Below are positions 1-17,849 of a stretch of 64,000 nucleotides of DNA, one piece after another (the stretch's first letter is position 1; every line of letters begins with the position of its first letter). The position numbers and the translations under genes are program-made. The stretch comes from Magallana gigas. Taxonomy: Eukaryota. Under the pieces are notes generated by a model. The model worked only from the letters and a program-made list of their open reading frames with translations. It was not told the origin of the DNA and did no database searches. The DNA lies in contig NC_088853.1 of the NCBI RefSeq assembly GCF_963853765.1, positions 40,362,001 to 40,426,000 of the forward strand. The letters run 5' to 3'.

Positions 1-660
1 GGCTGACGAAAAATAATCCCAGAGTTATTCCATTTACATCGGGTTATTTGCCGATGGCAGGGACTGAATTTTTTATGAGATAAAACTCAACACGTTAGAA
101 GTCTGAGAGTCTGATACATTCTTAGTTTTTAGAAAAAAAAATCAAGATCACTAGAGGACGGTGTGGGGGAGGGGGTGGTAGTGAAAAGGCCCTGACTTGA
201 TTTCAAATTTGAAGGTGTGTGTGTTTCTTGCTACCAATGTTTTATTTATACAATGTAATTTTATTTGATAAACTGTTTACGGGAATATTTCAAAAACTTT
301 GTTTTGATTTTACATGCAAATAAAGTTTTAAATATTTGGTAAAATTTTATATTTCATGCACTACAATATTTAATATTGTAGTGCTACCTCCAATCAAACT
401 GTTTTATCCTTAACACTTATGATGTCTGTATATGAGATCATAACTTAAGTTATTTTTCATCTTTATGACAGAATCGTTTGTTAATTAGATGGTCATTTTA
501 TTTTTGGAAAGATTGTAAGCGCATATATATTTTCCTTTTGTGTGGTGTGAAATGGCTCGTTATCAAACACTGGTTGTAGGGTCATTCGAGTAGTCAGAAG
601 GATCAATTCCATTCAATTCTTTATGTCTTTAAGCATTACAGCTTATCAGAGCAATACATG

Positions 661-666
<6 letters not shown>

Positions 667-725
<59 letters not shown>
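667..725. repeat. (TA)n microsatellite
   Basis: Pure TA run; explains the IYIYIY ORF at 623-853. Confidence 0.97.
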
Positions 726-729
<4 letters not shown>

Positions 730-1429
730 AAATAAAATAAAGGACATACAGATTTTGTCAATGCATAAACATGATGACCTTTGCTCATCTCATTCCTCTC
801 ATTCACTTACACGCACACGTACACCCTCTCATGCATTAAAAATAAATGGTTAAGGTAAGGTTGTATATTAGAAAATAAAGGAAGACACATTAAAGAACAT
901 GTAGAACTGAGGGGGGGGGGGTGTTATTAGTATACTCACAAAACAGACATCTTTGAATTGCATAACTTTTTTGTGGAGCTGTGTTAAAAATGCTTCCTTT
1001 TTTTTTACTAATAAAGAGACGTTAAATGTTAATCAATTTCTGGTATATTTAACTTGTTGTAAGAGCTACAAATTCACAGAAGAAAACAAATTGGCTTGTT
1101 GTAATGCATTGCTCTTCTACATGTAAGCTTTCAACAAGTTAAATCATACGGCAATCAGTTGCTTAAAATAGAAATATCCCTTTCAAAGTTTATATAAATT
1201 ATTACGATTGAATCAGAATCCATTCGTTTATACATACAGTTGCAACTCCATACACCTAGGAAAAGTTCCTTTTTTCCCCCAAATAATTTGCGTATGAAAT
1301 ACATTTATAAAAAACACGTGAAAAAGAGTTCATGGGAAATATAAAGAACATGTATGCACGTACATAAGTTTATACGTAAATCCGGCAATAACATCCGAGT
1401 ATAAATCTGCAGGCAAAACTCATCAATGG

Positions 1430-1717
1430 CACTTAGCGGGATTCAAACCAGGGATGCACTCGGTCTGTTCAAAAGTCAAAACATGACCCACTCGGCCATT
1501 GAGAGAGATAACTGACGTTGCAAATTTTCGATATTGTTTCCTTTTGATAAAAATATTAACGAACTATAGCTTATGAAATACACGGAAAACCTGTAACACT
1601 TAATTTGTATCTTTAAAAAAAATATTTTTTTCTTTTCCAAATAGGCCCAAATAGGCCCCGTGGCACTGAACGTAGATATTCAAATAGGCCCAAATAGGCC
1701 CTGTGGCACATAAGTGG
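1430..1717 (+). mobile_element. Right end of a piggyBac-like element (left end not found in the window), carrying a minus-strand tRNA-like segment
   Basis: Ends GGCCCTGTGGCACATAAGTGG followed by TTAA (1718-1721). An internal copy of the GTGGCAC motif lies 43 bp upstream. 1430-1500 reads on the minus strand as TGGCCGAGTGG...GGTTTGAATCC (A/B-box-like). Confidence 0.6.
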
Positions 1718-1867
1718 TTAAAAAAAAGAAATTAACAACACGATATATAAAACGTAAGCGCTTTCATTACATATACATATATATATATCCAAAATGTGCA
1801 GTCCTTGGTATAGGTAAATATAATTTAAATGAAAGTCGATGAAAACACGTTTTCAATCACTCTTTAA

Positions 1868-2722
1868 CCACTTCTGTGCCACAGGGCCGATTTTGGGCCG
1901 ATCACACAGTTGTCCAGAGTGCCACGGGGCCGATTTTAGGCCGATTTTAACTTTACACTTTTTCCATATGATTTATTAAATATACGTCAATAAATATAAA
2001 AGCATCGTATGTTATTATGAACAATAAAGTATCCAATTGTAATTTATTGACATATTAATTTATTATTTTGATTTTTAAAAGAGATTTATTGCGCTAGAAT
2101 TAACGGATTTCTTGATACATAGTTACACAAACTAAGATCTTTTTATCTGCCATCAAAATTTGCATAATTATTATATCAATTGTTGAAATAAAACTTAATG
2201 TGGTTTTTTTTATTGCTAAACATTACACTAAAACAGCATATGTTCATGTGCATTAATTTTATTAATTCATCGTAATTAACATATTGTTGCATAATTTTGT
2301 TCCGATTGTTTGTTTCTCAATAACTTCAAAAATTCAAGCAACAGATAATATTATTGCCCTAAATTATTTTTAAAATGTTTACGCAATGCATGCATGTATA
2401 TTATTTTCGAAACATATAATTCTTAAAAATAATATCAACATTGAAAAGAATGACATAAATGACTTCCATAACGCGGTATTTTGTTATAACGTCATTTTAC
2501 GTAAATGACGTCATAATAACACGTGCGTTCTGCCTTGCGCCGTACAAGATGGCTGGAGTGTGGTTCCGTGTATTGCCGCCTGAACCGGTGCAAAATAAGC
2601 CATTCACTGGGAACCCAGGGCCAAAGAACATGCCGGCGAGAAATGCATCTCCGTTGGAATATTTTCTTTTATTCTTCAACCTAAACCTAATACGAGAAGC
2701 TGTGCGTCAAACTGATAGGTAT
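1868..2722 (+). mobile_element. Left end and 5' part of a piggyBac transposon, truncated
   Basis: TTAA (1864-1867) then CCACTTCTGTGCCACAGGGCC, the inverted match of 1697-1717 with 1 mismatch. An internal TGCCAC repeat lies 43 bp inward, and a transposase 5' fragment follows. Confidence 0.7.
2548..2722 (+). pseudogene. N-terminal fragment of a piggyBac (DDE_Tnp_1_7/PGBD) transposase
   Basis: MAGVW...FTGNPGPKN...SPLEYFLLFFNLNLIREAVRQTDRY matches the conserved PGBD start (GP...SPxxxFxLFF...IVxxTNxYA). Homology stops where the tandem-array flank begins. Confidence 0.75.
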
Positions 2723-2759
2723 CGTATCCCATAATTTTTATAAATGATTTGGTATTGCA

Positions 2760-5700
2760 TGATGTAAGACTGTACAGGTCATATACTTCGTGTACAAAAT
2801 TGTATAGGGCGTATACTTTGTGTGCATAATTTCGTGTATACATTGGACCATATATAACCGATGATACATTGTGTATACTTAGTGTAAACGGTCTATACGC
2901 TTTGTACATTGGGTATACGTCGTGCAAACGGCCTGTACAGGGCGTATACTTTGTGTGCACCATTTTGTGTATACATTGGACCATATATAACCGATGATAC
3001 ATTGTGTATACTTGATGTACAAGGCCTGTACGCTTGGTACGTTGGGCATACGCCCTGTATAGGACGTATACTTCGTGCAAAACATTTGGTGTATACATTG
3101 GACCATATATAACCGATGATACATTGTGTATATTTGGTGTAAACGGTCTATTCGCTTTGTACATTGTGTATACTTGGTGTAAATGGTCTATACGCTTTGT
3201 ACATTGTGTACACTTGGTGTAAACGGTCTATACGCTTTGTACATTGGGTATACGTGGTGTAATCGGCCTGTACAGGGCGTATACTTTGTGTGCACAATTT
3301 CGTGTATACATTGGACCATATATAACAGATGATACATTGTGTCATTGTGTATACTTGGTGTACACGACCTATACGCTTGGTATTAGGCATACGCCCTGTA
3401 CAGGACGTATACTTCGTGCACAAAATTTGGTGTATACATTGGACCATATATAACCGATGATACATTGTGTATACTTGGTGTAAATGGTCTATACGCTTTG
3501 TACATTGGGTATACGTGGTGTAAACGGCCTGTACAGGTCATATACTTCGTGTACAAAATTGTATAGGGCGTATACTTTGTGTGCACAATTTGGTGTATAC
3601 ATTGGACCATATATAACCGATGGTACATTGTGTATACTTGGTGTAAACGGTCTACACGCTTTGTACATCGTGTATACTTGTTGTAAATGGTCTATACGCT
3701 TTGTACATTGGGTATACGTGGTGTAAACTGCCTGTACAGGGCGTATACTTTGTGTGCACCATTTGGTGTATACATTGGACCATATATAACCGATGATACA
3801 TTGTGTATACTTAGTGTAAACGGTCTATACGCTTTGTACATTGGGTATACGTCGTGCAAACGGCCTGTACAGGGCGTATACTTTGTGTGCACCATTTTGC
3901 GTATACATTGGACCATATATAACCGATGATACATTGTGTATACTTGGTGTAAACGGTCTATACGCTTTGTACATTGGGTACACGTGGTGTAAACGGCCTG
4001 TACAGGTCATATACTTCGTGTACAAAATTGAATAGGGCGTATACTTTGTGTGCACAATTTGGTGTATACATTGGACCATATATAACCGATGATACATTGT
4101 GAATACTTAGTGTAAACGGTCTATACGCTTTGTACATTGGGTATACGTCGTGCAAACGGCCTGTACAGGGCGTGTACTTTGTGTGCACAATTTGGTGTAT
4201 ACATTGGACCATATATAACCGATGATACATTGTGTATACTTGATGTACACGGCCTGTACGCTTGGTACGTTGGGCATACGCCCTGTATAGGACGTATACT
4301 TCGTGGCCAAAATTTGGTGTATACATTGGACCATATATAACCGATGATACATTGTGTATACTTGGTGTAAACTGTCTATACGCTTTGTGCATTGTGTATA
4401 CTTGGTGTAAACGGTCTATACGCTTTGTACATTGTGTATACTTGGTGTAAATGGTCTATACGCTTTGTACATTGGGTATACGTGGTGTAAACTGCCTGTA
4501 CAGGGCGTATACTTTGTGTGCACAATTTGGTGTATACATTGGACCATATATAACCGATGATACATTGTGTATACTTGGTGTAAACGGTCTATACGCTTTG
4601 TACATTGTGTATACTTGGTGTAAATGGTCTATACGCTTTGTACATTGGGTATATGTGGTGTAAACTGCCAGTACAGGGCGTATACTTTGTGTGCACAATT
4701 TGGTGTATACATTGGACCATATATAACCGATGATACATTGTGTATACTTAGTGTAAACGGTCTATACGCTTTGTACATTAGGTATACGTCGTGCAAACGG
4801 CCTGTACAGGGCGTATACTTTGTGTACAAAATTGTATAGGGCGTATACTTTGTGTGCACAATTTCGTGTATACATTGGACCATATATAACCGATGATACA
4901 TTGTGAATACTTAGTGTAAACGGTCTATACGCTTTGTACATTGGGTATACGTCGTGCAAACGGCCTGTACAGGGCGTATACTTTGTGTGCACAATTTGGT
5001 GTATACATTGGACCATATATAACTGATGATACATTGTGTATACTTGATGTACACGGCCTGTACGCTTGGTACGTTGGGCATACGCCCTGTATAGGACGTA
5101 TACTTCGTGCACAAAATTTGGTGTATACATTGGACCATATATAACCGATGATACATTGTGTATACTTGGTGTAAACTGTCTTTACGCTTTGTGCATTGTG
5201 TATACTTGGTGTAAACGGTCTATACGCTTTGTACATTGTGTATACTTGGTGTAAATGGTCTATACGCTTTGTACATTGGGTATACGTGGTGTAAACTGCC
5301 TGTACAGGGCGTATACTTTGTGTGCACCATTTGGTGTATACATTGGACCATATATAACCGATGATACATTGTGTATACTTAGTGTAAACGGTCTATACGC
5401 TTTGTACATTGGGTATGCGTCGTGCAAACGGCCTGTACAGGGCGTATACTTTGTGTACAAAATTGTATAGGGCGTATACTTTGTGTGCACAATTTCGTGT
5501 ATACATTGGACCATATATAACCGATGATACATTGTGAATACTTAGTGTAAACGGTCTATACGCTTTGTACATTGGGTATACGTCGTGCAAACGGCCTGTA
5601 CAGGGCGTATACTTTGTGTGCACAATTTGGTGTATACATTGGACCATATATAACTGATGATACATTGTGTATACTTGATGTACACGGCCTGTACGCTTGG

Positions 5701-6199
5701 TACGTTGGGCATACGCCCTGTATAGGACGTATACTTCGTGCACAAAATTTGGTGTATACATTGGACCATATATAACCGATGATACATTGTGTATACTTGG
5801 TGTAAACTGTCTATACGCTTTGTGCATTGTGTATACTTGGTGTAAACGGTCTATACGCTTTGTACATTATGTATACTTGGTGTAAATGGTCTATACGCTT
5901 TGTACATTGGGTATACGTGGTGTAAACTGCCTGTACAGGGCGTATACTTTGTGTGCACCATTTGGTGTATACATTGGACCATATATAACCGATGATACAT
6001 TGTGTATACTTAGTGTAAACGGTCTATACGCTTTGTACATTGGGTATGCGTCGTGCAAACGGCCTGTACAGGGCGTATACTTTGTGTGCACCATTTCGTG
6101 TATACATTGGACCATATATAACCGATGATACATTGTGTATACTTGATGCACAAGGCCTGTACGCTTGGTACGTTGGGCATACGCCCTGTATAGGACGTA
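2760..6199. repeat. Modular tandem array (10/30/40-bp modules, 122-213-bp units, 631-bp higher-order repeat)
   Basis: The anchor CATTGGACC occurs 22 times from 2841 to 6105. Spacings: 133,122,213,128,163,173,133,163,133,122,213,173,163,133,122,213,163,133,122,213,133. All short ORFs here are repeat artefacts. Confidence 0.97.
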
Positions 6200-6291
6200 T
6201 TTATCGTGCTATTCCAGACCTTTAAGTCCATGTGCTGCCAAATGTAAGGCCATGCGAATTTGAGCATTTTCCTTGCAAAGAGTCTATGGTG

Positions 6292-6299
6292 TGACGTCA
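6292..6299. promoter_or_regulatory. CRE-like palindrome TGACGTCA in the CpG-richer spacer upstream of the MULE ORF
   Basis: Exact TGACGTCA about 210 bp upstream of ATG 6510. Another copy at 2506-2513 precedes the piggyBac ORF. Function is inferred only. Confidence 0.25.
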
Positions 6300-6509
6300 T
6301 CACATTTTTAGTTGACATTTCTATATTGCTGCTGAAGTGGTCGGATCGTCTTGTGTTCAGTCGGCACTTATTCTCTAGAGAAGCCACACCGTTTAGTAAA
6401 TTCAATTAATCTTTCCATTATTAAACGCTCGTATTTCTATCGTAATATATTTACAGTGTATTCTATAATTGAAAGTTGCATGGTGTAGATTCAAATAGAT
6501 GTCATCAAA

Positions 6510-7964
6510 ATGAAAAGGCTATGCGGACCGAGAAAAAAACACAAATTAGATTATTGTGTTATTGGCCAATATTTAAGACAATTTTGTACAACCACAAATG
6601 ACAATGACCTTACTGACACCGGTCCTTACGGACAAACAGCAACCTCTTTGTTTTGGTCAAATTCGATCAAAAATAGGAAACATGTACAGGTTGTCTGGAA
6701 GGAGAATAGGGGTAATGTACAAAATGAAGGTGAGTTGGTGTCTACAAATCCAGTTAAAAATGATAATAAAGATGAAGACAGCAATGACAGGAATGTTAAT
6801 ACTGGGTTTGCCAAAGAAAATGAAAGTCAGAAGAAGTATTCAATCGGCAGAAAACGAAATAGACTCTCCTTTAATCGGAATAAAGAAACTATCAGCATCT
6901 CCTCGGATGAAAGTGATGACCATATCACGAGATCAACTCGAAAATTAAGGAAACAGAAAACTCCTTTCACCCCATCAATCAAACCAAAATCACCTACTGT
7001 ATACTGTATTTGCTCAAAACATTACACAGAAGTAGACAGCGGTAGGATGATTGAATGCCAGGGTTGTAGGAACTGGTATCATTGCTCATGTCTTTCACTA
7101 CCGGTATTAGAGTCAGAAATTTCCGGTAAGCATATATTCTTCAAATGTGGCCGAAAGACATGTAACAATGGTCAGTTTGACTACAAAGTAAAGGGAATAG
7201 CTATAATGCCAGACACGCTTGTTCTGCAAAACATGAACAGAACGGAACTCTTGATCGCTAATGTAGAAAAAAGATCAAAACGTATTCAGAGAGAAATTAA
7301 AGAGTTTTCAGATTCCAATGAATCTTTCCAATATCGAAAACTATCAGAACAACTAACAAGGTGTCTTTTAGAGCTAGATAGTATTGATACACACCAGCAA
7401 CACCAAATGAGGTCTTTACGAAAAGCTACCATTGACAATATTCACTTGATTATAAAAGAACTAGACGCGTCAGTAGTTAGTAGCCAACATTCCAAACGCA
7501 GGGATACAATTCCCAAGCAAGAGGAGTCTGATGAAAACAATATTTCAAATTTTACTGCTAGAATTAATGAAACATCCCCATTTCGCTTACCAGACCCTAT
7601 AGAAGAAACTGTTGCTGACATGAACGTTGAAAATGTATCGCTGGAATCTGCAACTCCGCTTAATTCCTTTGAAGAGAAACAAACAGATGTCGAGGAATGT
7701 CAGTTAAACCATGCAGAAATAGAACAGATCCTTAATGTCCAATTGCCATCCTTCTTTACCATGACATTGCCTACAAGTAGTTCTTTTATATTATCAGATG
7801 AAGATATGGTGCATCTGAATAATTCTCAAAATGGCCGTTGCTACAAAAAAGGTCACTGGCAACACATATTTGCAAAAGGAATAGCAACGTCAAACAAGCA
7901 TTGCGTTTTTATGTTTGATAAACATCAAATCAGCACAGCTAAAAAAAAGGAGAAAGAGGCGTAA
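6510..7964 (+). CDS. 5' part of the NOF-like MULE polyprotein: N-terminal region, PHD finger, BAG domain, start of the transposase N-terminal Zn-binding region
   Basis: PHD: YCIC...MIECQGCRNWYHCSC...C-x4-C (~7002-7163). BAG-like: YRKLSEQLTRCLLELDSIDT...MRSLRKATIDNIHLIIKELD (~7245-7470). The C-terminal HWQHIF...HCVFMFDKHQI continues into the next ORF if one A is removed from the A8 run at 7941-7948. Confidence 0.8.
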   Translation: MKRLCGPRKKHKLDYCVIGQYLRQFCTTTNDNDLTDTGPYGQTATSLFWSNSIKNRKHVQVVWKENRGNVQNEGELVSTNPVKNDNKDEDSNDRNVNTGFAKENESQKKYSIGRKRNRLSFNRNKETISISSDESDDHITRSTRKLRKQKTPFTPSIKPKSPTVYCICSKHYTEVDSGRMIECQGCRNWYHCSCLSLPVLESEISGKHIFFKCGRKTCNNGQFDYKVKGIAIMPDTLVLQNMNRTELLIANVEKRSKRIQREIKEFSDSNESFQYRKLSEQLTRCLLELDSIDTHQQHQMRSLRKATIDNIHLIIKELDASVVSSQHSKRRDTIPKQEESDENNISNFTARINETSPFRLPDPIEETVADMNVENVSLESATPLNSFEEKQTDVEECQLNHAEIEQILNVQLPSFFTMTLPTSSSFILSDEDMVHLNNSQNGRCYKKGHWQHIFAKGIATSNKHCVFMFDKHQISTAKKKEKEA

Positions 7965-10900
7965 TGTGCCAATGTTCAAATGCAAAGGACACTGCAAGTT
8001 CAAGGATTGTTCAGTCAAGGTCTATGTTGAAATGTTGGTTCCTAAAATGGTAAGTGTTTTTTATTCTGGTAACATGGAACACAAGATTACCGATCAACAT
8101 GCCAGACCAATAAGAGCCACTCAAAGAGAAATACTGAAGGAATCTTTCAAAAATGGCGGTAAACCCTTGAAACATTTCTTAGAGGCATTTGAAAAAAAAG
8201 ACACGGACCAAATTATATCCGGAAACTGCGATAATGTAGGTAAAGACGCACACGTCTTCCGACAAATATCTTCAGAAAGCAGGCAGATTGGTCGAATGGA
8301 CAAAGATTTAATTCAGTCATTGCTTACAATTATGAGAACGAGCAAGGAAAATGGATTTGGGTTTATTCAGCAACTTTCAGTAAAACCTTTCACTGTACAG
8401 TATTGGTCTGAAGAAGGTCTACGGCTATACCATAGCTTAGCAGAAAAAAATATTGTTTTCTGGGATGCCACAGGCAGCGTTGTCCGTAAAAGCGATGATG
8501 GTAAAAGGTTTCTGTACTACGAGCTTGCCCTGAGGCATCCAGTCAAAGGAAAGATGGGCATTCCTGTCTCTTCTATGGTGACAGATGACCAAAGTTTGCC
8601 ATCTATCTTGAACTGGATTGCACGTTTTAGACACGACGAGAAGAAACTCTTTGGGCATGGAAATGTTTCCCAGCCGAAAATGATTATAAGTGATGAATCG
8701 TGGGTTTTTATAATTGCTGCATTGAAAGAGTTTAATACAGAGACCCTGGCAGAATTTTTGAATAGGGCATGGAGAATTGCTAACGAACATGAACCAAAAG
8801 AAAGGAAAGACAAAACAATTGTTCATCTTTGTACGGGCCACTTTATGAATAAAGTAAAACGGTTCTGTTTGCAGAATTATAAACGCAATATAAAGTTTGG
8901 GATGTACCTTGTAAGTTTATTGCTAAATTGCAAAACCTTAAAGGCAGCAACAGAAATTTTACATGATATTTCTGTTGCGTTGCTATCAAAAAATATTACA
9001 AGTGCTAACAGACAATTTATTGATCGTTTGATGCAAAAAATCAACAAATTTGACACAAAGGAAAGTTCTTGTTCAGAATTGCCAGATGACTCTGAGAAAC
9101 ATTGCGAACAACAGAAGCCAGGTTTTTACACCGAGGAGGCTTTTATTAGTTTAGCTGGGACGTCGCCATTCAAACAATGGGCATGTGGTATAGTGGAAAG
9201 AACGCGAAACAGTTTACACATCTCTGATGAAAAGTCTATTAGAAATCCTTACTATTCTGAGGTCTTCTTGCAGCAAATACTCGACAGATACATCCCTATA
9301 TTACCACTATGGGGGTCTCTGATCTTACCAAGCGATTCTTCAAATGCAAAACATCATTCTATATACAACACTGGTGACATATGCAAGACCCAAAGTACAA
9401 TAGAAAACAGGTTTCGTATTTTGAAACAGATATCACTTGGAGATAATAAAAACAGACGTTTAGATGATTTCTCTGAGGAACTCAGAAAACATACTGTTTC
9501 AATTCAACGTCTGGTTGTAAAAGACACTTTAAAAGCTCCAAGTAATCTCAAAAGAAAAAGGTCTCAAAGTACTTTAAAGGAAGCATGGAGCAAGAAACAG
9601 AAACCTTTGAACATTTCAACAGAGACAGGAGATTTTCAAAAAACCCCTACTAAGGTTATCAATCTCCCAGAGGTAGTTACCCTCACAGAACACAGGGATT
9701 TGTTCAGTGGAACAAAAGTGTGTCCGATTGACAACTTGGGTTCTACCTGTTGGTTCAACTCGGTAATGCAAGCTGTGAGCGGATGCAAGATGTCTGAATC
9801 CTTGCAAAACCACGAAATGATTATTGATGTAGACAAGGATTCGTACAACACACTGAAACGTTCTGTCATTTCTCTTTTAAGAACTATGTCGAAAAACAAG
9901 TGTACAAATACCAAGGCCCCTAGAGAACAGGTAAGGCAAGCTCTGTCTGACATCGCTAAATTCGAAGGAGAACTTGGTGCAAATTTGGGGCAACAGCATG
10001 ACGCAAATGAATTTTATTTAAAAATAGTCTCCCCAATAGCCAAAGACATTGGTGAACAACTTCAAATCCAACAAGCCTTTAATTGCATTGACTGTAAATA
10101 CAGAAACTGTATAACAGAGTGTCTTGTCAATTCTATTGGGCTTACTGTACCAAACGATGCATCCGATGCGTCAATATCCTCCTTGTTGAACTACTATTTT
10201 GAACATGAAATTCGAGAACAATGTCAAAAGTGCTCAGGTTTATTGTATTTGCAGCAAGAATTGACTAAAATCCCTACAACTCTTGTCCTCACCGTGAACA
10301 GGTTTCAGTATAATGCTGCAACCTCAAACATGTCAAAGCTCAAAAAGAGCATTCAAATTGACCGTGAAATAGATCTTTCAAAACATGTCAAAGGTGTTTC
10401 AAATTGCAGGTACGTATTAAAAAGTGTTGTTTGTCACCACGGACGATCTATTAATTCTGGCCACTACACGACAAATCTTATTGCAAACAATTCAATTGTG
10501 AAAGTTAGTGATGCAAACGTGTCTGTTGGTTCCGAAAATGAAATGCAAAGAGACTGTTATGTTCTGTTTTATGACAGGCACGTTAATTTGCCTGATTTTG
10601 TCAAGCCAGCATTAGAATGCATAGGCAACACATTAGCAAATACTGTTTCTGCATCATGCCAAAACCAAAGTACAGTCCAAGAAATGTTTATTCCCGCTCT
10701 TCTAAAACAGGGAGACATAGACACGGCTGTATCATTGATTTCCAAAAATGTTGACGCCTTTACTTCAAACAACTATTTCAATATGTTTGAGGTTGTTTTG
10801 AAAACAATATTTGGTTGTGGTAAAGAGGCTTCTTACAAAGTCAGTGCTCATAGCTTTCTCTTGTCCAAAGTCCGTGTAAGTGTTTGCAATGTATGCAAAA

Positions 10901-12024
10901 ATAAAATGATAGAAAGAGATGACAGTTTTTGTGTGTTGAAACCACTAACTTTATTTCAAACAGATATTGTCAATTCCTTTGCTGCTTCTACGAACATGTG
11001 TAGCCATGATGTAAGCTCAGATGAATATATCTGCAGTTTACCTGAAAGCATGATTTTGTGTCCCCAGCAAACGATGAAAGCAACTGATATGGCCTTGGCA
11101 GAAATAGATTTGGAAAGTAGTATGAAAACAGTTTTTCCGTTAGTTAGCAGGCAGTATCAACTTTTACTCACTGTGGTGAAAGACGAGGGGATTGTTAGAA
11201 TAATAAAGCATGGACCAACAAATAATACCAACAATGAGTCAACGCCATGCGTGTTGAAAGAGACAGCAGAAGTAGTTGCGACAGTTTACGATCTGAAACC
11301 GAAATCTGCGTCATTCACAATAATGCCGACGTCCAGACTTAAGGAAGATTGTTTTACACCTTTACGAATTCCAAACAAATCGTTCAAAGATAGTTTACAC
11401 AACCAGGATGTTGTCCATCAAAATGGAACAATATCTCTAGACACAGCCCTGTGTATGGCAAGAGACACATACTGGCTGTCTAGTGATGATGTTAATAACT
11501 ATATGAAAATGTTGTGTTTGATGGCCCCAGAAAAGGTACATTTTGTCGATGCCGGTTGGTTTAGCCATAAAATCTTAAAAGATGAAACACTGACATCCTC
11601 CGTCTTCAGTTTAGAAAACAGCAAACAAAGTTGGTTTGGCAAATCTAAAGTTGTTGTTCCTATAAATCTTAGAAACGTTCATTGGGTGTTAGTTGTTATT
11701 GACATCAAAGAGAAGGTTATGTATTTTTGTGACTCAAAGGGAGACCCACCAAAAATAATTTTACTGCAAATAACTCGGTATATTTCATACGAGTTCTTAA
11801 TGAGGTTTGGTAGGAAACTAGACCTGTCAAAGTGGAAATATATCGAGTTCTGTAAGGAACTTAATTTTCCCATACAGATAGACGATAGCAGTTGTGGAGT
11901 TTATATTTGCGAGATGGCAAAATCAATCCTTTACAAAAAAAGAATATATCACCACAACAAATTGGCGACACGAATGAGGGCTCAAGTTGTACGAGAATTG
12001 TACTCCGGTTCAATTGAGTTTTAA
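7915..12024 (+). CDS. 3' part of the NOF-like MULE polyprotein: DDE transposase, USP (peptidase C19) deubiquitinase, Ulp1 (peptidase C48) protease
   Basis: MULE core: FWDATG (D 8464), ISDES (D 8692), CTGH (CxxH), IENRF (E 9403). USP: NLGSTCWFNSVMQ (Cys 9748), QQHDANEF, VVCHHGRSINSGHY (His 10462), VSDANV. Ulp1: VPINLRNVHWVLVVID...CDS...QIDDSSCGVY (His 11680, Cys 11893). Confidence 0.88.
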   Translation: MINIKSAQLKKRRKRRNVPMFKCKGHCKFKDCSVKVYVEMLVPKMVSVFYSGNMEHKITDQHARPIRATQREILKESFKNGGKPLKHFLEAFEKKDTDQIISGNCDNVGKDAHVFRQISSESRQIGRMDKDLIQSLLTIMRTSKENGFGFIQQLSVKPFTVQYWSEEGLRLYHSLAEKNIVFWDATGSVVRKSDDGKRFLYYELALRHPVKGKMGIPVSSMVTDDQSLPSILNWIARFRHDEKKLFGHGNVSQPKMIISDESWVFIIAALKEFNTETLAEFLNRAWRIANEHEPKERKDKTIVHLCTGHFMNKVKRFCLQNYKRNIKFGMYLVSLLLNCKTLKAATEILHDISVALLSKNITSANRQFIDRLMQKINKFDTKESSCSELPDDSEKHCEQQKPGFYTEEAFISLAGTSPFKQWACGIVERTRNSLHISDEKSIRNPYYSEVFLQQILDRYIPILPLWGSLILPSDSSNAKHHSIYNTGDICKTQSTIENRFRILKQISLGDNKNRRLDDFSEELRKHTVSIQRLVVKDTLKAPSNLKRKRSQSTLKEAWSKKQKPLNISTETGDFQKTPTKVINLPEVVTLTEHRDLFSGTKVCPIDNLGSTCWFNSVMQAVSGCKMSESLQNHEMIIDVDKDSYNTLKRSVISLLRTMSKNKCTNTKAPREQVRQALSDIAKFEGELGANLGQQHDANEFYLKIVSPIAKDIGEQLQIQQAFNCIDCKYRNCITECLVNSIGLTVPNDASDASISSLLNYYFEHEIREQCQKCSGLLYLQQELTKIPTTLVLTVNRFQYNAATSNMSKLKKSIQIDREIDLSKHVKGVSNCRYVLKSVVCHHGRSINSGHYTTNLIANNSIVKVSDANVSVGSENEMQRDCYVLFYDRHVNLPDFVKPALECIGNTLANTVSASCQNQSTVQEMFIPALLKQGDIDTAVSLISKNVDAFTSNNYFNMFEVVLKTIFGCGKEASYKVSAHSFLLSKVRVSVCNVCKNKMIERDDSFCVLKPLTLFQTDIVNSFAASTNMCSHDVSSDEYICSLPESMILCPQQTMKATDMALAEIDLESSMKTVFPLVSRQYQLLLTVVKDEGIVRIIKHGPTNNTNNESTPCVLKETAEVVATVYDLKPKSASFTIMPTSRLKEDCFTPLRIPNKSFKDSLHNQDVVHQNGTISLDTALCMARDTYWLSSDDVNNYMKMLCLMAPEKVHFVDAGWFSHKILKDETLTSSVFSLENSKQSWFGKSKVVVPINLRNVHWVLVVIDIKEKVMYFCDSKGDPPKIILLQITRYISYEFLMRFGRKLDLSKWKYIEFCKELNFPIQIDDSSCGVYICEMAKSILYKKRIYHHNKLATRMRAQVVRELYSGSIEF

Positions 12025-12222
12025 ATAGATGGAAACTATGATGCTGATTACCGTTGTATAAGAGATTGCTCGCCAACAACTTTAATGATCATGTAAAGAA
12101 GTTAACCATAGGAATTTTCCAAGAAACTTTTTCACGTTTTTGCGAGTATAGAAAAATGTATGATGGTTTTCCCGTATTGTAAATATTGTGTGACGTAGCA
12201 TTTTCTTTAAAACCAAACAAAC

Positions 12223-14900
12223 AACGTAACAGTGGAAAATCTGGGAAAACAGTATATGACTCTATTATTGTTATCATTTAGTTTTGTCTCTCTCAAAGAA
12301 GAGCTTATTCTTAGCCATAGTGTTTTTTCTTTGCTTGCTGAAATAAGTCTGTGATTTAGGTGTACATATTTTAAATGTGATTTTAAGACGGAAAAAGTTA
12401 CCCATATTCAACTGTTTTTTTCTTTCTTGATATTGTTACTTTGTCTTTGTCACTGCGAGACGGAAATACAATATAGTTAAATACCTCAATTGTTTTAATC
12501 GCACAGATTATTTGTTACTAAACAATAATTAAAAGCATTCTGTATTTGCTAGTAAGAGTACTAATGTTACTTTGAAATATTTCAAACAGTTCCGGGTAAA
12601 ACTAACTAAGATGTAACTATTTGATAACCATTTGCTTTTATTTTTACCAAAGATGTATATGTAGTTATGCGATATTGTCTGATAAGGACAGTGAACGTTA
12701 CTCTTTCACCGTGCATGCATAGTATTACTGTTTCTTTTTTGCATGAAAATTACGTTACAGCTCATAAGACTATTGCTAGTTCACTCCTAAGAACCTTTTG
12801 TTATCACGCAGATTTGTCCTTCTCGGGAAAAGCTCATTCTTTGTTTTGCTAAAATTGGGACTGAGATTAAGGTGTGTGTATATATATTAGAATGCCATTT
12901 TGTAACAAAATTAAGAATTGATCTTTGTTATTTTGCTGAGCACAGTTACATTTTTGCCTCTGCTGTTACATTTTTGCCTCTGCTGAACTAGATCTGGTTT
13001 AATAACCAAAATCAAGATAGTGAACTTTTCTAAATTGCACGAAACATGTTGCTATACAATAAAAGCATTTAGCATATTCAAACGGGGATTAAGGTTACTT
13101 TGAAAGAACTCAAACAGTGACGAAGTAAAATTAACAAAAAATGCCAACCCATGCCAAACAACCATTTTCTTTTATTTGCTTCTTCTCTAAATCAAGGATG
13201 CTTATATATTTTTTTAACCAAAGATGTACAGTATATATAGTTATGCGATATTGTAAATATGTGTTTGTCTAATAAGACAGGGAACGTTACTTTTTCACTG
13301 TGCGAGCAAATTATTATTTTGTATTGTCCGTTTTAGGTTGAAGTGTACTCCAGTTTAAATGATTTTTTATGAAAATAACAGTACTGCTCATATGGGTATT
13401 GCTAGTTCACTTCTAAGAACCTATTATTATCACATAGTTTTGTCCCTCTCAGGAAAGAGCTCATTTTTGTTGGTTTTGCTAAAATTTAGACTTAGATTAA
13501 AATGTGTATATATATATTTATACCAGTATATTAGAATGGCATTTTATAAGAAATGATCTTTATTATTTTGCTGAGCACAGTTACGTTTTTGTCTCTGTTG
13601 AACTGGTTTTGGTTTAATAACCAAAATCAAGACAACCAACGTATCAGTGGAAAATCTGGGAAAACAGTATATGACTCTATTATTGTTATCATTTAGTTTT
13701 GTCTCTCTCAAAGAAGAGCTTATTCTTAGTTGTAGTGTTTTTTCTTTACTTGCTGAAATAAGTCTGCGATTTAGGTGTACATATTTTAAATGTGATTGTA
13801 AAACGGAAAAAGTTGCCCATATATAACTGCTTTTTGCTTTCTTGATATTGTTACTTTGTCTTTGTCAGTGCTAAACGGAAATACAATATAGTTAAATACC
13901 TCAATTGTTTTAATCGCACAGATTATATGTTACTAAACAATAAATAAAAGCATTCTGTACTAGTATTTGCTAGTAAGAGCACTAAGGTTACTTTGAAATA
14001 TTTTAAACAGTTCCGAGGTAACACTAAGATGTAACCCAAAAAACCATTTGCTTTTATTTTTACCAAAGATGTCTATATTAAAAAGTTAAATCCTTCCCAA
14101 GCCAATCATGGCTTATAAGGCTGGTGCTTATACCCGGTTTCCGTGGTGCTAAGCGGATGAGAGTCGCAGACTCCCCCTGGATGGGACACCAGTGCATCGC
14201 AGGTTAACTCCCCAGCCTAAGCCGGTACCCATTTTCAGCTGGGTGGACTGAGACAACGCAGATTAAGTGTCTTGTCTAAGGACACAACACACAACATCAA
14301 CCGCCCACAGTGGGATTTGAACTGGGGACCTCTCGGTTACCAGCCAAGCCACTAGAACGACTGAGCTATGTGCTCCACAAAGATGTCTATATAGTTATGC
14401 GATATTGTAAATATGGGTCTAATAAGGACCTGCACTGTGTACGTTTTGTTCGTTTTAGGTTGTCAGGTTGTATGAGATGTGTAATCGGGTTTAATTAATT
14501 TTAAGAAGGATGGATGTTTGAAAATAGCGGTACTGCTTGTAAGACTGTTTAGTATTGCTAATGAATTTGCATGTCAACTATTTTGATGATCAGGGTTGGA
14601 AGTTAATCCTAGTTATATAGTAAAGGAAAATACTGGTATGTATAAGAAATACAGCATTACTACTCTTGGGTATTTAGTTTTATATTGAAAATATCAGTTG
14701 TTTCCGTAACAACAACTAACGTAAATATGGAAAATCAGGTAAACATAAAAACAGTGAATGGGTTACTCCAACCATCCTACTGTTACATTGTAACACTTAC
14801 ATTGTCTCTCTCTAAGAAGATCTTATTCTTTGTTGATTTTGTTTTGCCGAAAGGATGATCAAGTTTGTAATTATGTCACAAAACTCAGTTCCCTTTATTT
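12223..14900. repeat. Degenerate tandem repeat of ~0.6-0.8-kb units (about 3 and a bit copies)
   Basis: AACGT(A)xCAGTGGAAAATCTGGGAAAACAGT at 12223 and 13639, degenerate near 14716. CAAAGATGT...ATAGTTATGCGATATTG near 12649, 13220 and 14064/14378. GGTTTAATAACCAAAATCAAGA near 12997 and 13612. Confidence 0.85.
14079..14377 (-). mobile_element. Full-length tRNA-derived SINE with a conserved central domain (V/CORE/Meta-type superfamily)
   Basis: Minus strand: TAGCTCAGTCG (A box)...GTTCAAATCCC (B box), then GTGTCCTTAGACAAGACACTTAA...CCACCCAGCTGAAAATGGGTACC and GGTGTCCCATCCAGGGGGAG. 15-bp TSD CAAAGATGTCTATAT at 14064-14078 and 14378-14392. Confidence 0.88.
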
Positions 14901-15004
14901 TGCTAAAATTATAATATATATATACAAATGTATATGCTTTATTGTATTCCTTTTTTTATTAATTTCATAATATTTAATTTCTTCCATAAATACAATGCAA
15001 TTAA

Positions 15005-15740
15005 TACTGACTCTGATAAAAATTAATTTATCAAACACTTGATTTTTTATTTAATTTTAGGAAATTAATTTTTAAAAAAGGGATCTAAACCTTTTACTGT
15101 GGTATTAAATCAGTATTTCTACAAAGTACAATTTATACCAACTACTTCTTTCAGGCAAGTGGATCCAATATACTCATATCATTTTCTATTGTGTGCAGAA
15201 GTTTTTGGAATCTTAATCCCTAATAATAATGATATTAGGGGTATAACAATAGATTGAATATAATATAAGCTTTCCCAATATGCAGATGACACTTAATATT
15301 TGATGGTACGCCCAAGTCAATGGATAGTATTCTAAATTAATTAGACTATTTTGCATATAACCCAGGGCGTATAATTAACTATCCTAAAACTTAAATCTGG
15401 GATCGGAAGCAAAAAGCACTCAAAAGAAGTTTTTCATCATACACGATGGAAGTTAGCCCAGAATAATCCCACGTTTGACCTTGGGGGGGGGGTCCATTGA
15501 TCTAAATAAAACGATTGGATTAAACTATCCTCATGATCCTATGAAATGTAAAGAACATACACAATTGATAAATCAATGGCAATTAAGAAAATTAACTGCA
15601 ATTGGAAGATTAACATGCAGTTATAAAATCTTGAATCATACCTAAACATAGCCATTTAATACTTACTATATCACACCCAAGTATAGAATATCTGCAGCAA
15701 TTAGAAAAAAAAACATCATTCTATTATCGAAGATACCTGA
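15005..15740 (+). pseudogene. Decayed L1/Tx1-type LINE reverse transcriptase fragment
   Basis: Manual translation from 15153: RQVDPIYSYHFLLCAEVFGILIPNNNDIRGITID*I*YKLSQYADDT. Later: IPKHSHLILTISHP. Multiple stops and frameshifts. Confidence 0.8.
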
Positions 15741-17849
15741 TGGATGAAATAAATGACAAGAAGAATGTTGACTAGTTGCTTTATTCTAGTTTGGCGTTAC
15801 TGGCCGCAGTGACTTTAGGCTACCAATGGGCTGCCTTACAACAAAATTCAAATAAATGGTGACGACCTATCAACAGGCTCATTGTGCAGTGGGTAAACGC
15901 AAATGCACAAACGTCACAAATAAGTAAATTGAAAGTTCAAATCAACACACATTAAATTTGTCAATAAATTGTACATGTAAATATAAAATATTTGTGCGAA
16001 TGGGTAAACGCAAATGCACTTTATAAGTTCAAACTACATTGTACGTGGAACTTGTCCTTACATGTTTGTGTCCATTAAAATAGTGAAAGTTATGGTACAA
16101 TAAGTAATGGGGAAATGCTCCAGTATGAACACACAGCATTTGAAACACATCAACATGAATTTGCCACACATAAGCTGATAAGTTGAAATTGGATATCATA
16201 TGTAGCGCCGTCGTGCGGTAAACGGCTTCTTAATGGTTTTTTACAAATTTCAATGGATTTAATAATTCCAATCTAACTAAGGTATTTCCTCCACATCCTC
16301 AATGTTTTAAAATCAGACAATCACAAAGTTTATATACAATTTATTTACATGGCAATAATCCCGAGAAACACATATATAACACGCACAAAATAAATAATAT
16401 CCTTTGAACGGCTCTATAGAATGAAGTGAACGAAGTGCGCACAGTGCGAAATCTGTACCCGTATATATACACACTGGCCGATGCTCATAAGGAGCATCGC
16501 CATCAAAACAAAAGAATTACGTAATGGTCACGCCGATGCTCGCAAGGAGCATCGGGTAGCTATTTACATGGACGCATATAAACAAAATATAATGAACCCC
16601 ACCCCCAGGAATCCGGGGTCACCTAATTGTCACAAGTCCTAGTTTGGGTGCCTTGCGCCCATTTACCGAGGGATATTTTCTGTCGGGATCGAAAAACTAG
16701 TCGATAAGCATATTTAGGACTGAGTTAGTGCGTTGAAGTTAGTGCGTGCTAGCTTGACTCTGGTGTTTATGTATTCATTGGAAATTTTAAGTCCCTGTGC
16801 TGCAACAAACATGTCTTCAAATGCAAAATGGAAAGTATTCCCAAGTAAGTCCTTTTTTGGGGGGTGGGGGTGGAGCACTGTCAGTATGAATTATGATTTT
16901 GTTCTCGTAATAGCATGGTCAATGTTAGGCCTGTAGTCTCTCCTTGTATAATTGTACATGTACAGTATCAGACTTATTTCTCAATTACAACAGAAATGTC
17001 CAAAGACCTACTGACCAAAAACCAGTTCTCACTTAGAATCCTCTCTCGACACTCAATCAGTATATTGTATGTATAACTATTGGAAATGCAATGCTTGATG
17101 TAGTCTTGGGTCTTAGGTGGAATAATACACCTGGAAAAAGTCACTCAAATTAACAGTAAATTATTTGATTATAAAAGATATAATGATAGATAAACCGTAA
17201 ATATGTCAAATACGAAATGTGCTTTCGATCAGAGGTCAGCCATTCTGTGATGATGTGTTATTCCACCTGTTAATGGGATCAATCATGGAAATTAAACAGG
17301 TTTTAAATAATAAATAAGAATTATATTGATAACACAAGAAAAAAAAAATTTTACACATATATGTGTGTGGTTTTTTTTTTGGTATTAAGCTCTCTGAAAT
17401 GTGCACTGCCTTGCAAAAACTAAATGATAAATTTTGCAAAAAGTCTTCTCTTTTTTTTTAAAAATAATTCATAATATACTGGCGTGCCACCAGTTCTCGC
17501 AATGTACTGGCAAGAAATAGTCATCATTGGGAACAGTTCGCACGCCAGTTAAGTTAAAACATTTGTTAAAGCCACATTACATTATGTGCAAATTAAAAGC
17601 TCTGTTAGCCTGCCATATTAGAATAGAATACAAAATTATTAAATTAGATGTATGTCTCAATTTTGGTAATGTCTTAGAAATGATTTAATTGTTAAACTAA
17701 AATTTTAAATATATTGACGGAAAACTTCCTACACTGTAAGCTCTATAGCAATTAAGATGACCTTGAAGAAAACAATTGTAAAATCAAACTTACTCTTTTA
17801 AACATTATTTTAGTTGATATACCAAATAGCTTCTGTCCCAAAAATTTAA

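What the first reader, a model, noticed from the sequence alone, without database searches (positions are those of the whole stretch)
2760..6199. 3.4-kb modular array with 10-bp phasing and higher-order structure: a candidate Foldback-type terminal arm
Seen: 22 anchored units whose lengths (122/133/163/173/213) differ by 30- and 40-bp modules. The 40-mer divides into four related 10-mers (CATTGTGTAT/ACTTGGTGTA/AACGGTCTAT/ACGCTTTGTA) rich in GTATAC, TGTACA and GTGCAC palindromes. The 133-122-213 triplet recurs four times, and a 631-bp higher-order unit is near-identical. The array ends ~310 bp before the NOF-like ORF. Established: Drosophila FB-NOF elements have arms built from short modular tandem repeats. 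Inference: a helically phased transposase-binding arm, or a satellite being generated by the element.
Basis: partly seen in the sequence, partly recalled or inferred. Interest (0 to 1): 0.7.

Follow-up and report, generated by a model that had tools for sequence, protein, structure and literature searches.

The report
Phased internal satellite in oyster transposon
The 3.4-kb modular repeat is real, but it is an internal, fast-changing satellite inside an 18-kb foldback-type Mutator-like oyster transposon, not its terminal arm, and in another copy it has grown to 32 kb.

Summary
There are 22 units of 122/128/133/163/173/213 bp, built from 40- and 30-bp modules, with a 631-bp higher-order repeat. 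TA steps are phased at 10.18 bp.

The array is not a terminal arm. It lies 4.16 kb inside an 18,152-bp transposon whose left end is 1,388 bp before the window and whose right end is at 16764. That element has 172-bp inverted ends and a 10-bp target duplication. Its true foldback arms are 182-bp repeats (CgiSat28 family) that end 31 bp before the window starts.

About 14 inverted-end-bounded copies exist, and nine have 9-10-bp target duplications. Only three carry the 1,841-aa protein. Its DDE core best matches IS256/Mutator-type transposases.

The array shares no 9-mer with the ends. It is absent from a sister family and from a pearl-oyster relative, and it ranges from 4 to 211 forward units between loci (8-211 in all). 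In the rearranged third coding copy it is a 32-kb block with a nested higher-order repeat.

Most likely this is a passively carried, unequal-exchange-driven internal satellite. This scan has already noted foldback elements with satellite arms in this genome, on other DNA.

The parts
1..1862 (+). Internal unique part of the transposon. It begins 31 bp after the 182-bp left arm, which lies outside the window together with the left end at C1:40360613 (1,388 bp before window base 1). It contains a (TA)n run at 661-725.
   Evidence: 99.5% or more identical to the other copies and continuous with L054.
1863..2764 (+). Captured 5' piece of a piggyBac-like gene, in two blocks (1863-2065 and 2449-2764). 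It includes the first coding exon (ORF 2459-2734) and the start of its intron. Homology stops exactly where the array begins.
   Evidence: 78-80% identity to C3:29.37 Mb and C5:4.43 Mb, ending at 2764. In the C5 paralogue the exon is followed by an intron and a typical piggyBac transposase exon.
2760..6199 (+). The modular tandem array: 22 units, two unit types, 40- and 30-bp modules, a 631-bp higher-order repeat, and TA steps phased at 10.18 bp.
6200..6509 (+). Unique 310-bp spacer between the array and the ORF. It contains a TGACGTCA motif at about 6294.
   Evidence: 99.6% identical in the C4 and C1 ORF-bearing copies.
6510..12024 (+). Gene for the BAG-PHD-DDE transposase-USP-Ulp1 protein. 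In this copy it is split into two ORFs by one extra A in an A-run (A8 instead of A7) at about 7942-7949. It also lacks 12 bp relative to the 1,841-aa form.
   Evidence: Fold and profile evidence.
12025..16592 (+). Non-coding 3' internal part of the element.
   Evidence: No ORF of 120 aa or more and no long tandem array (only two ~2-copy repeats of 41-45 bp).
16593..16764 (-). Right terminal inverted repeat: 105 bp of unique end plus the first third of one 182-bp unit.
   Evidence: 93.6% complementary over 172 bp to the left end at L054:4613-4784. Sequence read. The genome-wide search with the end finds it too.
16765..16774 (.). Target-site duplication GTTTATGTAT. Its partner is at L054:4603-4612, just before the left end.

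Best explanation
The array is an internal, non-coding satellite. It is carried passively inside one young subfamily of a foldback-type, Mutator-superfamily DNA transposon of an oyster (Pacific oyster or a close relative).

Element layout, left to right:
- a 105-bp unique end;
- an arm of 182-bp repeats;
- 2.8 kb of unique DNA, which includes a captured piggyBac-like gene start;
- the modular array;
- a 310-bp spacer;
- the 1,841-aa transposase gene;
- 4.6 kb of non-coding DNA;
- the right inverted end.

Shown here: the element's ends, arms and target duplications; the copy distribution; the absence of end-like motifs in the array; the array's absence from relatives; and its extreme length variation.

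Inferred: the array grew from a roughly 10-bp TA-containing motif by successive duplication into 20-, 40-, 133- and 601/631-bp units and a super-unit of about 4.7 kb. It changes by unequal exchange, replication slippage and template switching during gap repair after excision. Those processes would also produce the deleted and inverted versions seen in non-coding copies. The array is not needed for transposition. Its 10.18-bp phasing is a legacy of how it was built, and it may position nucleosomes as a side effect.
For: Position:
- The left flank is conserved at 99.5-99.8% at the 14 array loci where it was fetched.
- The ends and the 10-bp target duplication are at L054:4613 and window 16764.
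- An 8,071-bp copy has arms of about 2 kb made of 182-bp repeats at both ends, with the modular array in the middle.

Mobility:
- About 14 inverted-end pairs exist, with ends identical over 105 bp.
- Nine have 9-10-bp target duplications, two of them with one mismatch, in unrelated flanks.

No link to the ends: the array shares no 9-mer with the inverted ends or arms.

Dispensable:
- The sister family (58% identical transposase) has a 182-bp arm but no such array.
- The Pinctada relative has other arrays, of 146 and 187 bp.

Turnover:
- The fully fetched copies share the opening 133,122,213,128,163 (one lacks the 122), then differ. Forward counts per locus run from 4 to 22 units, and 211 in the third coding copy.
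- The two intact coding copies are 99.6% identical in their flanks but differ after unit 11.
- In three non-coding copies examined (six carry an inverted array part) the innermost arms are 64 nt apart.
- The rearranged third coding copy has 211 units over 31.9 kb, with its strongest long-range self-identity at a lag of 4,696 bp.

Confinement: all 77 hits of the B-type unit lie in these loci or in one fragment.
Against: - The array lies directly upstream of the ORF in all three coding copies, 310 bp in the two read to the start codon.
- Its TA phasing is unusually clean and persists over 32 kb: 10.16 bp, power 200.
- Contigs from RNA libraries bridge both array junctions at about the same depth as the ORF, while the equally repeated stretch 2000-2196 is empty in three of four runs. 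The array may therefore be transcribed.
- No binding, chromatin or expression experiment exists.
- No non-coding copy that has lost the array completely was seen, although this may only reflect their youth.
Confidence: 0.7

Rival explanations
1. The array is a cis-acting element for the transposase gene. It could be a promoter-proximal chromatin element, with nucleosome-positioning or insulating DNA set by TA steps every 10.18 bp. Or it could be a transcribed leader between the captured piggyBac-like promoter and exon and the transposase ORF.
For: - It lies directly upstream of the ORF in all three coding copies, 310 bp in the two read to the start codon.
- A single dominant 10.16-10.18-bp TA peak.
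- A captured gene start abuts its left edge.
- RNA-library contigs span 2279-2863 and 6116-6614 at a depth similar to the ORF, with 2000-2196 empty in three of four runs.
- The encoded protein carries a PHD histone reader.
Against: - Absent from the sister family and the Pinctada relative.
- Forward unit number ranges from 4 to 211.
- Kept in copies that have no ORF.
- The contigs are Logan assemblies and cannot prove transcription, strand or start site. No splice across the array was seen.
- The leader would hold many upstream ATGs.
Confidence: 0.15
2. One reading: the array is a Foldback-type terminal arm, a helically phased platform of transposase-binding sites at the element's end.
For: - The host element is foldback-like and Mutator-like.
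- The array is phased.
- Inverted pairs of the array exist in six non-coding copies and next to the 32-kb block.
Against: - The array starts 4,157 bp inside the left end, after the 182-bp arm and 2.8 kb of unique DNA.
- The right end at 16764 has none of it, and no reverse-strand anchor exists in the window.
- The inverted pairs abut in the middle of elements with a 64-nt spacer, not at the ends.
- It shares no 9-mer with the inverted ends.
- The sister family lacks it.
Confidence: 0.03
3. The array is the remnant arm of a second, unrelated hairpin-type element that inserted into an ancestor of this subfamily. The head-to-head array pairs with a 64-nt loop would be the intact form.
For: - Array(+)/64 nt/array(-) is present in at least three copies, and six copies carry an inverted array part.
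- Many satellite-armed foldback elements are reported in this genome by earlier notes of the scan (untested).
Against: - The outer end of the inverted arm does not repeat the array's left terminal 72 bp. That piece matches once per locus.
- No target duplication or independent copies were found. Every B-unit hit lies within this family's loci.
- The left boundary coincides with the breakpoint of the captured gene fragment.
Confidence: 0.07

Closest known systems
Drosophila Foldback (FB / FB-NOF) elements and other Mutator-superfamily foldback elements such as Tm1 of root-knot nematodes (PMC3169594)
   Same: - Long inverted arms built from tandem repeats.
- Arms that vary in length between copies and between the two ends.
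- 9-bp (8-10) target duplications.
- Most copies non-coding, with a few carrying a large transposase gene.
- A short-period build-up of repeats (from my own knowledge of FB arms, not tested here).
   Different: - Here the arm repeat is 182 bp. The finding itself is a second array that is internal.
- The coding copy is asymmetric: the left arm has 6.9 units and the right has one third of a unit.
- The protein carries BAG, PHD, USP and Ulp1 domains.
- Homology to the Drosophila NOF protein itself was not tested.
Tetris / TIR-220 of Drosophila virilis (PMC4079207)
   Same: - A foldback element with 8-10-bp target duplications.
- Its own tandem repeats have been amplified into kb-size satellite-like arrays.
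- A modular structure with many rearranged forms.
   Different: - In Tetris the amplified repeats belong to the inverted arms, and no coding copy is known.
- Here the amplified array is internal, and the coding partner is present.
Oyster satellite DNAs carried by mobile elements: CgiSat28 (182 bp, Repbase label DNA/MuDR; PMC8268682) and Helentron-borne repeats (PMC7492417)
   Same: - The 182-bp arm of the sister family matches the published CgiSat28 consensus by eye.
- The window family's arm is a diverged variant with the same period.
- The general pattern is short satellite-like arrays scattered with transposons.
   Different: - The modular array's anchor and a core motif (both strands) do not occur in the supplementary files of that paper held as text, which include the CgiSat consensus sequences.
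- The anchor (both strands) does not occur in the searched paper library.
- It belongs to a Mutator-like element, not a Helentron.
Galileo (P superfamily) long inverted repeats with multiple THAP-binding sites (PMC3688188)
   Same: It is the model behind the 'binding-site array' idea: long repetitive inverted ends that hold several transposase-binding sites.
   Different: - Those sites are in the ends.
- The present array is internal and shares no motif with the ends.
Pack-MULE-type gene-fragment capture (PMC8277862)
   Same: A Mutator-like element carries a fragment of another gene: the start of a piggyBac-like gene at window 1863-2764.
   Different: The captured piece comes from another transposase-type gene. 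It directly abuts the array, and no chimeric transcript was shown.

Membership tests
Foldback-type transposon (structural class) | Long terminal inverted repeats made largely of tandem repeats, variable in length | tested here: met
   Met by the 182-bp repeats. The left arm has 6.9 units in the window's element. Both arms are about 2 kb in the 8-kb copy. The distance from the left end to the array is 4.0-7.4 kb in most copies and up to about 15.7 kb in three larger or complex ones.
Foldback-type transposon (structural class) | The array under review is itself the terminal arm and is mirrored at the other end | tested here: not met
   It starts 4,157 bp inside the left end. No reverse-strand copy exists in the window. 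The right end at 16764 lacks it.
Foldback-type transposon (structural class) | Target-site duplication of about 9 bp (8-10) | tested here: met
   9 bp at four copies, 8 of 9 matching at two, and 10 bp at the window copy and C2:56.1 Mb. The second coding copy has 9-10 bp. Four of thirteen copies have none or an odd one.
Foldback-type transposon (structural class) | Most copies non-coding, few with a transposase gene | tested here: met
   About 14 inverted-end pairs, but only three loci carry the ORF at 97% identity or more.
Mutator superfamily (MULE) transposase | DDE triad with a CxxH motif after the second D | tested here: met
   D184, D260 and H309 are invariant and C306 and E497 nearly invariant across 40 relatives. 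HHalign puts them in register with the DST, TDD, CxxH and TNxxES motifs of oyster MULE-domain ORFs.
Mutator superfamily (MULE) transposase | Match to the Pfam MULE model PF10551 | tested here: not met
   No hit for the protein at E up to 10 or for 40 relatives at E up to 0.01. PF10551 hits 81 places in the genome, none of them this family.
Mutator superfamily (MULE) transposase | Profile or structural kinship with MULE/IS256 transposases | tested here: inconclusive
   HHalign against four MULE-domain ORFs gives probability 75.8%, E 2.3e-5, over 234 columns. The AlphaFold model has pLDDT 81.5. The best structural match is the ISCth4 (IS256-family) transposase at Z 12.5, ahead of Hermes at 10.3 and the P element at 9.5. 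Foldseek E-values are only about 1e-3. The evidence is suggestive and consistent, but not decisive.
Drosophila NOF protein family | Sequence homology to the NOF ORF of FB-NOF | not tested
   No NOF sequence came back from any search. The ten relatives whose names I looked up are unnamed or uncharacterised proteins of sea cucumbers, a rotifer and metagenomes.
Satellite DNA with higher-order repeats | Head-to-tail units, higher-order periodicity, arrays of tens of kb | tested here: met
   A 631-bp higher-order repeat in the window. 211 units over 31.9 kb at C1:10351258-10383138, with 601-bp and about 4,696-bp higher orders. Genome total is 385 anchors.
Published C. gigas satellitome (CgiSat01-52) | Monomer present among the catalogued consensus sequences | tested here: not met
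   The array anchor and a core motif, on both strands, are absent from the supplementary files. Only the sister family's 182-bp arm matches CgiSat28.

The most novel reading that the evidence does not exclude
The array is a selected, helically phased chromatin element. With TA steps every 10.17 bp over kilobases, it would fix the rotational setting of nucleosomes, or recruit a factor, just upstream of the gene for a transposase that itself carries a histone reader and two ubiquitin-like-protein proteases. That could shield or tune the expression of the element. Its expansion to 32 kb would then be a by-product of that role.
Probability: 0.1. Interest if true: 0.7.

Novelty: new member of a known kind. 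Interest (0 to 1): 0.4.

Why it matters
It gives a fully delimited example, with both coding and non-coding copies, of a Mutator-type foldback transposon in an oyster. It links the 182-bp CgiSat28-type satellite to the element arms and to a candidate transposase. It also catches a second, uncatalogued tandem repeat in the act of growing, from a few units inside mobile copies to a 32-kb block with nested higher-order repeats. That makes it a usable test case for how satellites are born from transposons, and for whether strict 10.2-bp TA phasing has any effect on chromatin.

Tried and rejected
- The first AlphaFold model, from a 12-sequence alignment, was poor (pLDDT 55), and its Foldseek search gave nothing. 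A 40-sequence alignment fixed this.
- Pfam finds no transposase family in the core, either for the protein or for 40 relatives.
- The PDB sequence search finds only the USP and SENP domains.
- A word-based search with a profile of distant relatives gave only sea-cucumber proteins.
- The protein atlas was busy.
- I tested whether the array derives from the intron of the captured piggyBac-like gene. Local alignment gave z = 1.0, so I rejected this.
- I tested whether the array repeats motifs of the inverted ends. It shares no 9-mer.
- I first took the window's array to be the largest copy. That was wrong: the DNA search scores only the best candidates, and pattern searches revealed the 32-kb block.
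- The array anchor and a core motif were not found in the text-held supplement of PMC8268682. The anchor was not found in the paper library either. PMC11136912 has no held supplement.
- Searches of the scan's own notes by sequence and by specific words gave nothing.
Full report
**1. The observation**

The array is in the sequence as described.
- The 17-mer ATTGGACCATATATAAC occurs 22 times on the + strand between 2842 and 6106, and nowhere else in the window on either strand.
- The spacings are 133,122,213,128,163,173,133,163,133,122,213,173,163,133,122,213,163,133,122,213,133.
- The 133-122-213 triplet occurs four times.
- The 631-bp block from 4874 is repeated at 99% identity.
- The array ends 310 bp before the ATG at 6510.

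Laid out in tens, each A-type unit is a 30-bp anchor block, then one to three 40-bp modules, then a 63-bp tail. This gives 133, 173 and 213 bp, and an extra 30-bp module gives 163. The 122/128-bp units are a second, divergent type.

GTATAC, TGTACA and GTGCAC are five to ten times over-represented against a first-order Markov model.

The 10-bp claim needs a correction. Identity at lag 10 is low (0.21), while lags 9 and 11 (0.42), 20 and 40 are high. The periodogram of TA steps has one dominant peak at 10.18 bp, with power 77 against about 7 in a coding control. The common unit lengths are close to whole numbers of 10.18-bp turns (122 = 12.0, 133 = 13.1, 163 = 16.0, 173 = 17.0, 213 = 20.9).

**2. 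Where the array sits**

It is not at an end of anything.
- The DNA to its left (window 1-2770) is 99.5-99.8% identical at the 14 array loci where it was fetched. It runs on beyond the window's left edge.
- In the 6 kb before the window (L054) there is a 182-bp tandem array of 6.9 units. It ends 31 bp before window base 1.
- The similarity between copies stops at L054:4613, where the sequence reads ACCAAAGTCAAGCTAGC.
- The same 172 bp occur inverted (93.6% match), ending at window 16764.
- Both ends are flanked by GTTTATGTAT.
- The element is therefore 18,152 bp long (C1:40360613-40378764).
- The array starts 4,157 bp inside the left end, and the right end has no trace of it.

**3. The family in the genome**

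A search with the 105-bp end finds about 14 inverted-end pairs, 8-25 kb apart. Most have ends identical over 105 bp. Nine elements have 9- or 10-bp target duplications, two of them with one mismatch, in unrelated flanks. These are real transpositions.

An 8,071-bp copy shows the architecture most clearly: end plus about ten 182-bp units, 2.8 kb of unique DNA, eight units of the modular array, then about ten inverted 182-bp units plus the other end. The foldback arms are the 182-bp repeats.

Only three loci carry the large ORF: the window, C4:10.31 Mb and C1:10.35 Mb. Every locus with the array lies inside such an element or in the rearranged C1 region. The one exception is a fragment at C1:4.45 Mb.

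**4. How the array behaves**

- The fully fetched copies share the opening 133,122,213,128,163 (one lacks the 122), then differ. Forward unit numbers per locus run from 4 to 22.
- The two intact coding copies are 99.6% identical in their flanks but diverge after unit 11.
- Six non-coding copies have part of the array inverted head-to-head. In the three examined the innermost arms are 64 nt apart, which suggests one ancestral event that was then spread by transposition.
- Pattern searches corrected my first impression that the window holds the largest array. The 30-nt anchor occurs 385 times in the genome and never in the reversed-pattern control.
- The third coding copy has one uninterrupted array of 211 units over 31.9 kb (C1:10351258-10383138). 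It uses the same unit lengths, has 601-bp repeats and its strongest long-range self-identity at a lag of 4,696 bp, and has a TA peak at 10.16 bp.
- That copy is rearranged. Beyond the array come 12 inverted units and then unrelated DNA, with no left arm or end.

**5. The protein**

The two window ORFs are one gene broken by an extra A in an A-run (A8 instead of A7). The intact 1,841-aa form is on a public contig that is colinear with window 6171-12259.

Pfam sees BAG, PHD, UCH and Peptidase_C48 domains, but nothing in the 600-residue core. That core has 1,398 relatives at E of 0.001 or below. None of 40 sampled relatives has a Pfam transposase domain.

D184, D260 and H309 are invariant, and C306 and E497 nearly so. 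A 40-sequence AlphaFold model (pLDDT 81.5) matches DDE transposases only:
- Foldseek returns the P element, Transib, RAG1, ISCth4 and Hermes.
- VIA-align ranks ISCth4, an IS256-family enzyme, first at Z 12.5. IS256 is the bacterial kin of Mutator; that statement is from my own knowledge.

HHalign against four oyster ORFs that carry the Pfam MULE domain gives 75.8% probability and E 2.3e-5, with the D, D, CxxH and E motifs in register.

Taken together with the 9-10-bp duplications, I file the protein as a divergent Mutator-superfamily transposase. I could not test kinship to NOF itself.

**6. Relatives**

A sister family at C3:23.75 Mb has a 58% identical transposase with an open 1,866-aa frame. 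It has a 182-bp arm array upstream of its ORF. The TRF consensus of that arm matches the published CgiSat28 consensus by eye. CgiSat28 is listed as 182 bp with the Repbase label DNA/MuDR (PMC8268682). This fits an oyster, C. gigas or a close relative, as do the 'oyster metagenome' labels of the RNA runs that hold the stretch.

The sister family has no modular array between arm and ORF. The pearl-oyster homologue (55% identity) has a 187-bp array downstream and a 146-bp array upstream, and neither shows the single phased peak.

The arm repeat, with its period of about 182 bp, is therefore the conserved feature. The modular array is specific to one subfamily. Its anchor and a core motif are absent from the CgiSat supplementary files, and the anchor from the searched paper library.

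**7. The left boundary**

Window 1863-2065 and 2449-2764 are 78-80% identical to loci on C3 and C5. The homology ends exactly at 2764. In the C5 paralogue the same exon is followed by an intron and a typical piggyBac transposase exon. The element therefore carries the captured start of a piggyBac-like gene, and the array begins at the breakpoint. The array is not derived from that intron (z = 1.0).

**8. RNA libraries**

Logan contigs from four RNA runs cover 2279-2863, scattered parts of the array, and 6116 onward. Their depth is similar to that over the ORF. The equally repeated stretch 2000-2196 is empty in three of the four runs.

That pattern looks more like RNA than like contaminating DNA. 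However, contigs cannot show strand, start site or continuity, and I had no second call to lay a silent control. I treat transcription of the array as possible, not shown.

**9. Explanation and rivals**

I commit to the passive internal satellite reading, with confidence 0.7. The grounds are:
- its internal position;
- no motif shared with the ends;
- its absence from relatives;
- a more than 25-fold range in unit number between loci;
- runaway growth in a broken copy.

The steps from a roughly 10-bp motif up to the 4.7-kb super-repeat, and the role of unequal exchange and gap-repair template switching, are inferred.

A cis-regulatory or chromatin role cannot be excluded (0.15). The array's fixed place directly upstream of the ORF and the clean phasing argue for it. 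A nested second element (0.07) and the terminal-arm reading (0.03) fit poorly.

**10. Comparison and novelty**

The element works like Drosophila FB/FB-NOF and nematode Tm1. The array's history parallels Tetris/TIR-220, where foldback-borne repeats seeded satellites (PMC4079207, PMC3169594). It also fits the oyster pattern of satellites carried by mobile elements (PMC7492417, PMC8268682).

Earlier notes of this scan report several other satellite-armed foldback elements in the same genome, on other DNA (untested by me).

What is new here:
- the delimitation of this family together with its coding copy;
- the link of the CgiSat28-type arms to it;
- an uncatalogued, strictly phased internal array caught at sizes from a few units up to 211.

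It is a new member of a known kind.

**11. Caveats**

- Counts from the DNA search are lower bounds.
- The C1:10.29-10.39 Mb region is complex and only partly read.
- The 32-kb block rests on one assembly.
- The frameshift in the window's ORF could be a homopolymer error.
- The organism is inferred, not given.

Noticed in passing
window 1863-2764 (paralogues L078 = C3:29368500-29373000 and L079 = C5:4427500-4431500): The element carries the captured start of a piggyBac-like gene: upstream region with a palindromic ACGTCA-type motif at 2484-2519, the first coding exon and about 30 bp of intron. Homology to the paralogues (78-80%) stops exactly at the array boundary.
   Followed up: partly
window 7942-7949: An A8 run, against A7 in the public contig L076, splits the transposase gene into two ORFs in this copy. 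A 12-bp in-frame deletion (CQTP) lies further on. It could be a real defect or a homopolymer assembly error.
   Followed up: partly
G000 C1:10351258-10383138, with the inverted part C1:10383313-10384760 (L092-L095, L091): There is a 31.9-kb uninterrupted array of 211 units next to the third ORF-bearing copy. It is followed by 12 inverted units and then unrelated DNA. That copy has lost its left arm and end. More arrays lie nearby at C1:10.296, 10.314 and 10.320 Mb.
   Followed up: partly
G000 C4:10311783-10330773 and C4:42370265-42387997 (L081, L082, L064, L065): The second coding copy and one non-coding copy sit in the same flanking sequence, reverse-complemented, about 32 Mb apart. Either the target is itself a repeat, or a segment was duplicated and the element inside it later changed.
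   Followed up: no
L051:4000-5300 (C7:2463000-2464300): Non-coding copies contain about three units of a 516-bp repeat. Each unit embeds an 86-bp piece of the array unit (anchor region, 92-94% identical), about 3.7 kb from the inverted array part. The interior of these copies (L051:421-4137) has no similarity to the coding element.
   Followed up: no
L077:4335-7000 (C3:23753967-23756632): The sister family's 182-bp arm matches the published satellite CgiSat28. It shares only short motifs (a GGCGCC pair, CCGGATTCC, CCGGTCTCAG, AAACTAGGA) with the window family's 182-bp unit, although both have exactly the same period.
   Followed up: partly
L087:121-3258 (C8:11063515-11066652) and L089: Ordinary MULE-domain ORFs of this genome begin with an OTU-like cysteine-protease motif (GDGNCLFRS). 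This is a second case of a Mutator-type transposase fused to a ubiquitin-family protease in the same genome.
   Followed up: no
L080:23538-25529 and 6265-7194 (Pinctada imbricata contig VSWD01000009.1): The pearl-oyster homologue (55% identity, 1,842 aa) has a 187-bp array of at least 10.6 units 8 kb downstream and a 146-bp array 2.8 kb upstream of its ORF. Satellite-bearing architecture recurs in the family with unrelated repeat sequences.
   Followed up: partly
window 311-723: This stretch, which includes the (TA)n run at 661-725, is missing in the C7:2.45 Mb copy. L053 joins window 310 to 724. It is an indel polymorphism between copies at a microsatellite.
   Followed up: no
runs X7 and X14: RNA libraries labelled as two other organisms (coded B and C) hold the array flanks and the ORF at 95-100% identity. 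The family is therefore shared by close relatives, or the samples are hybrids or mislabelled.
   Followed up: no
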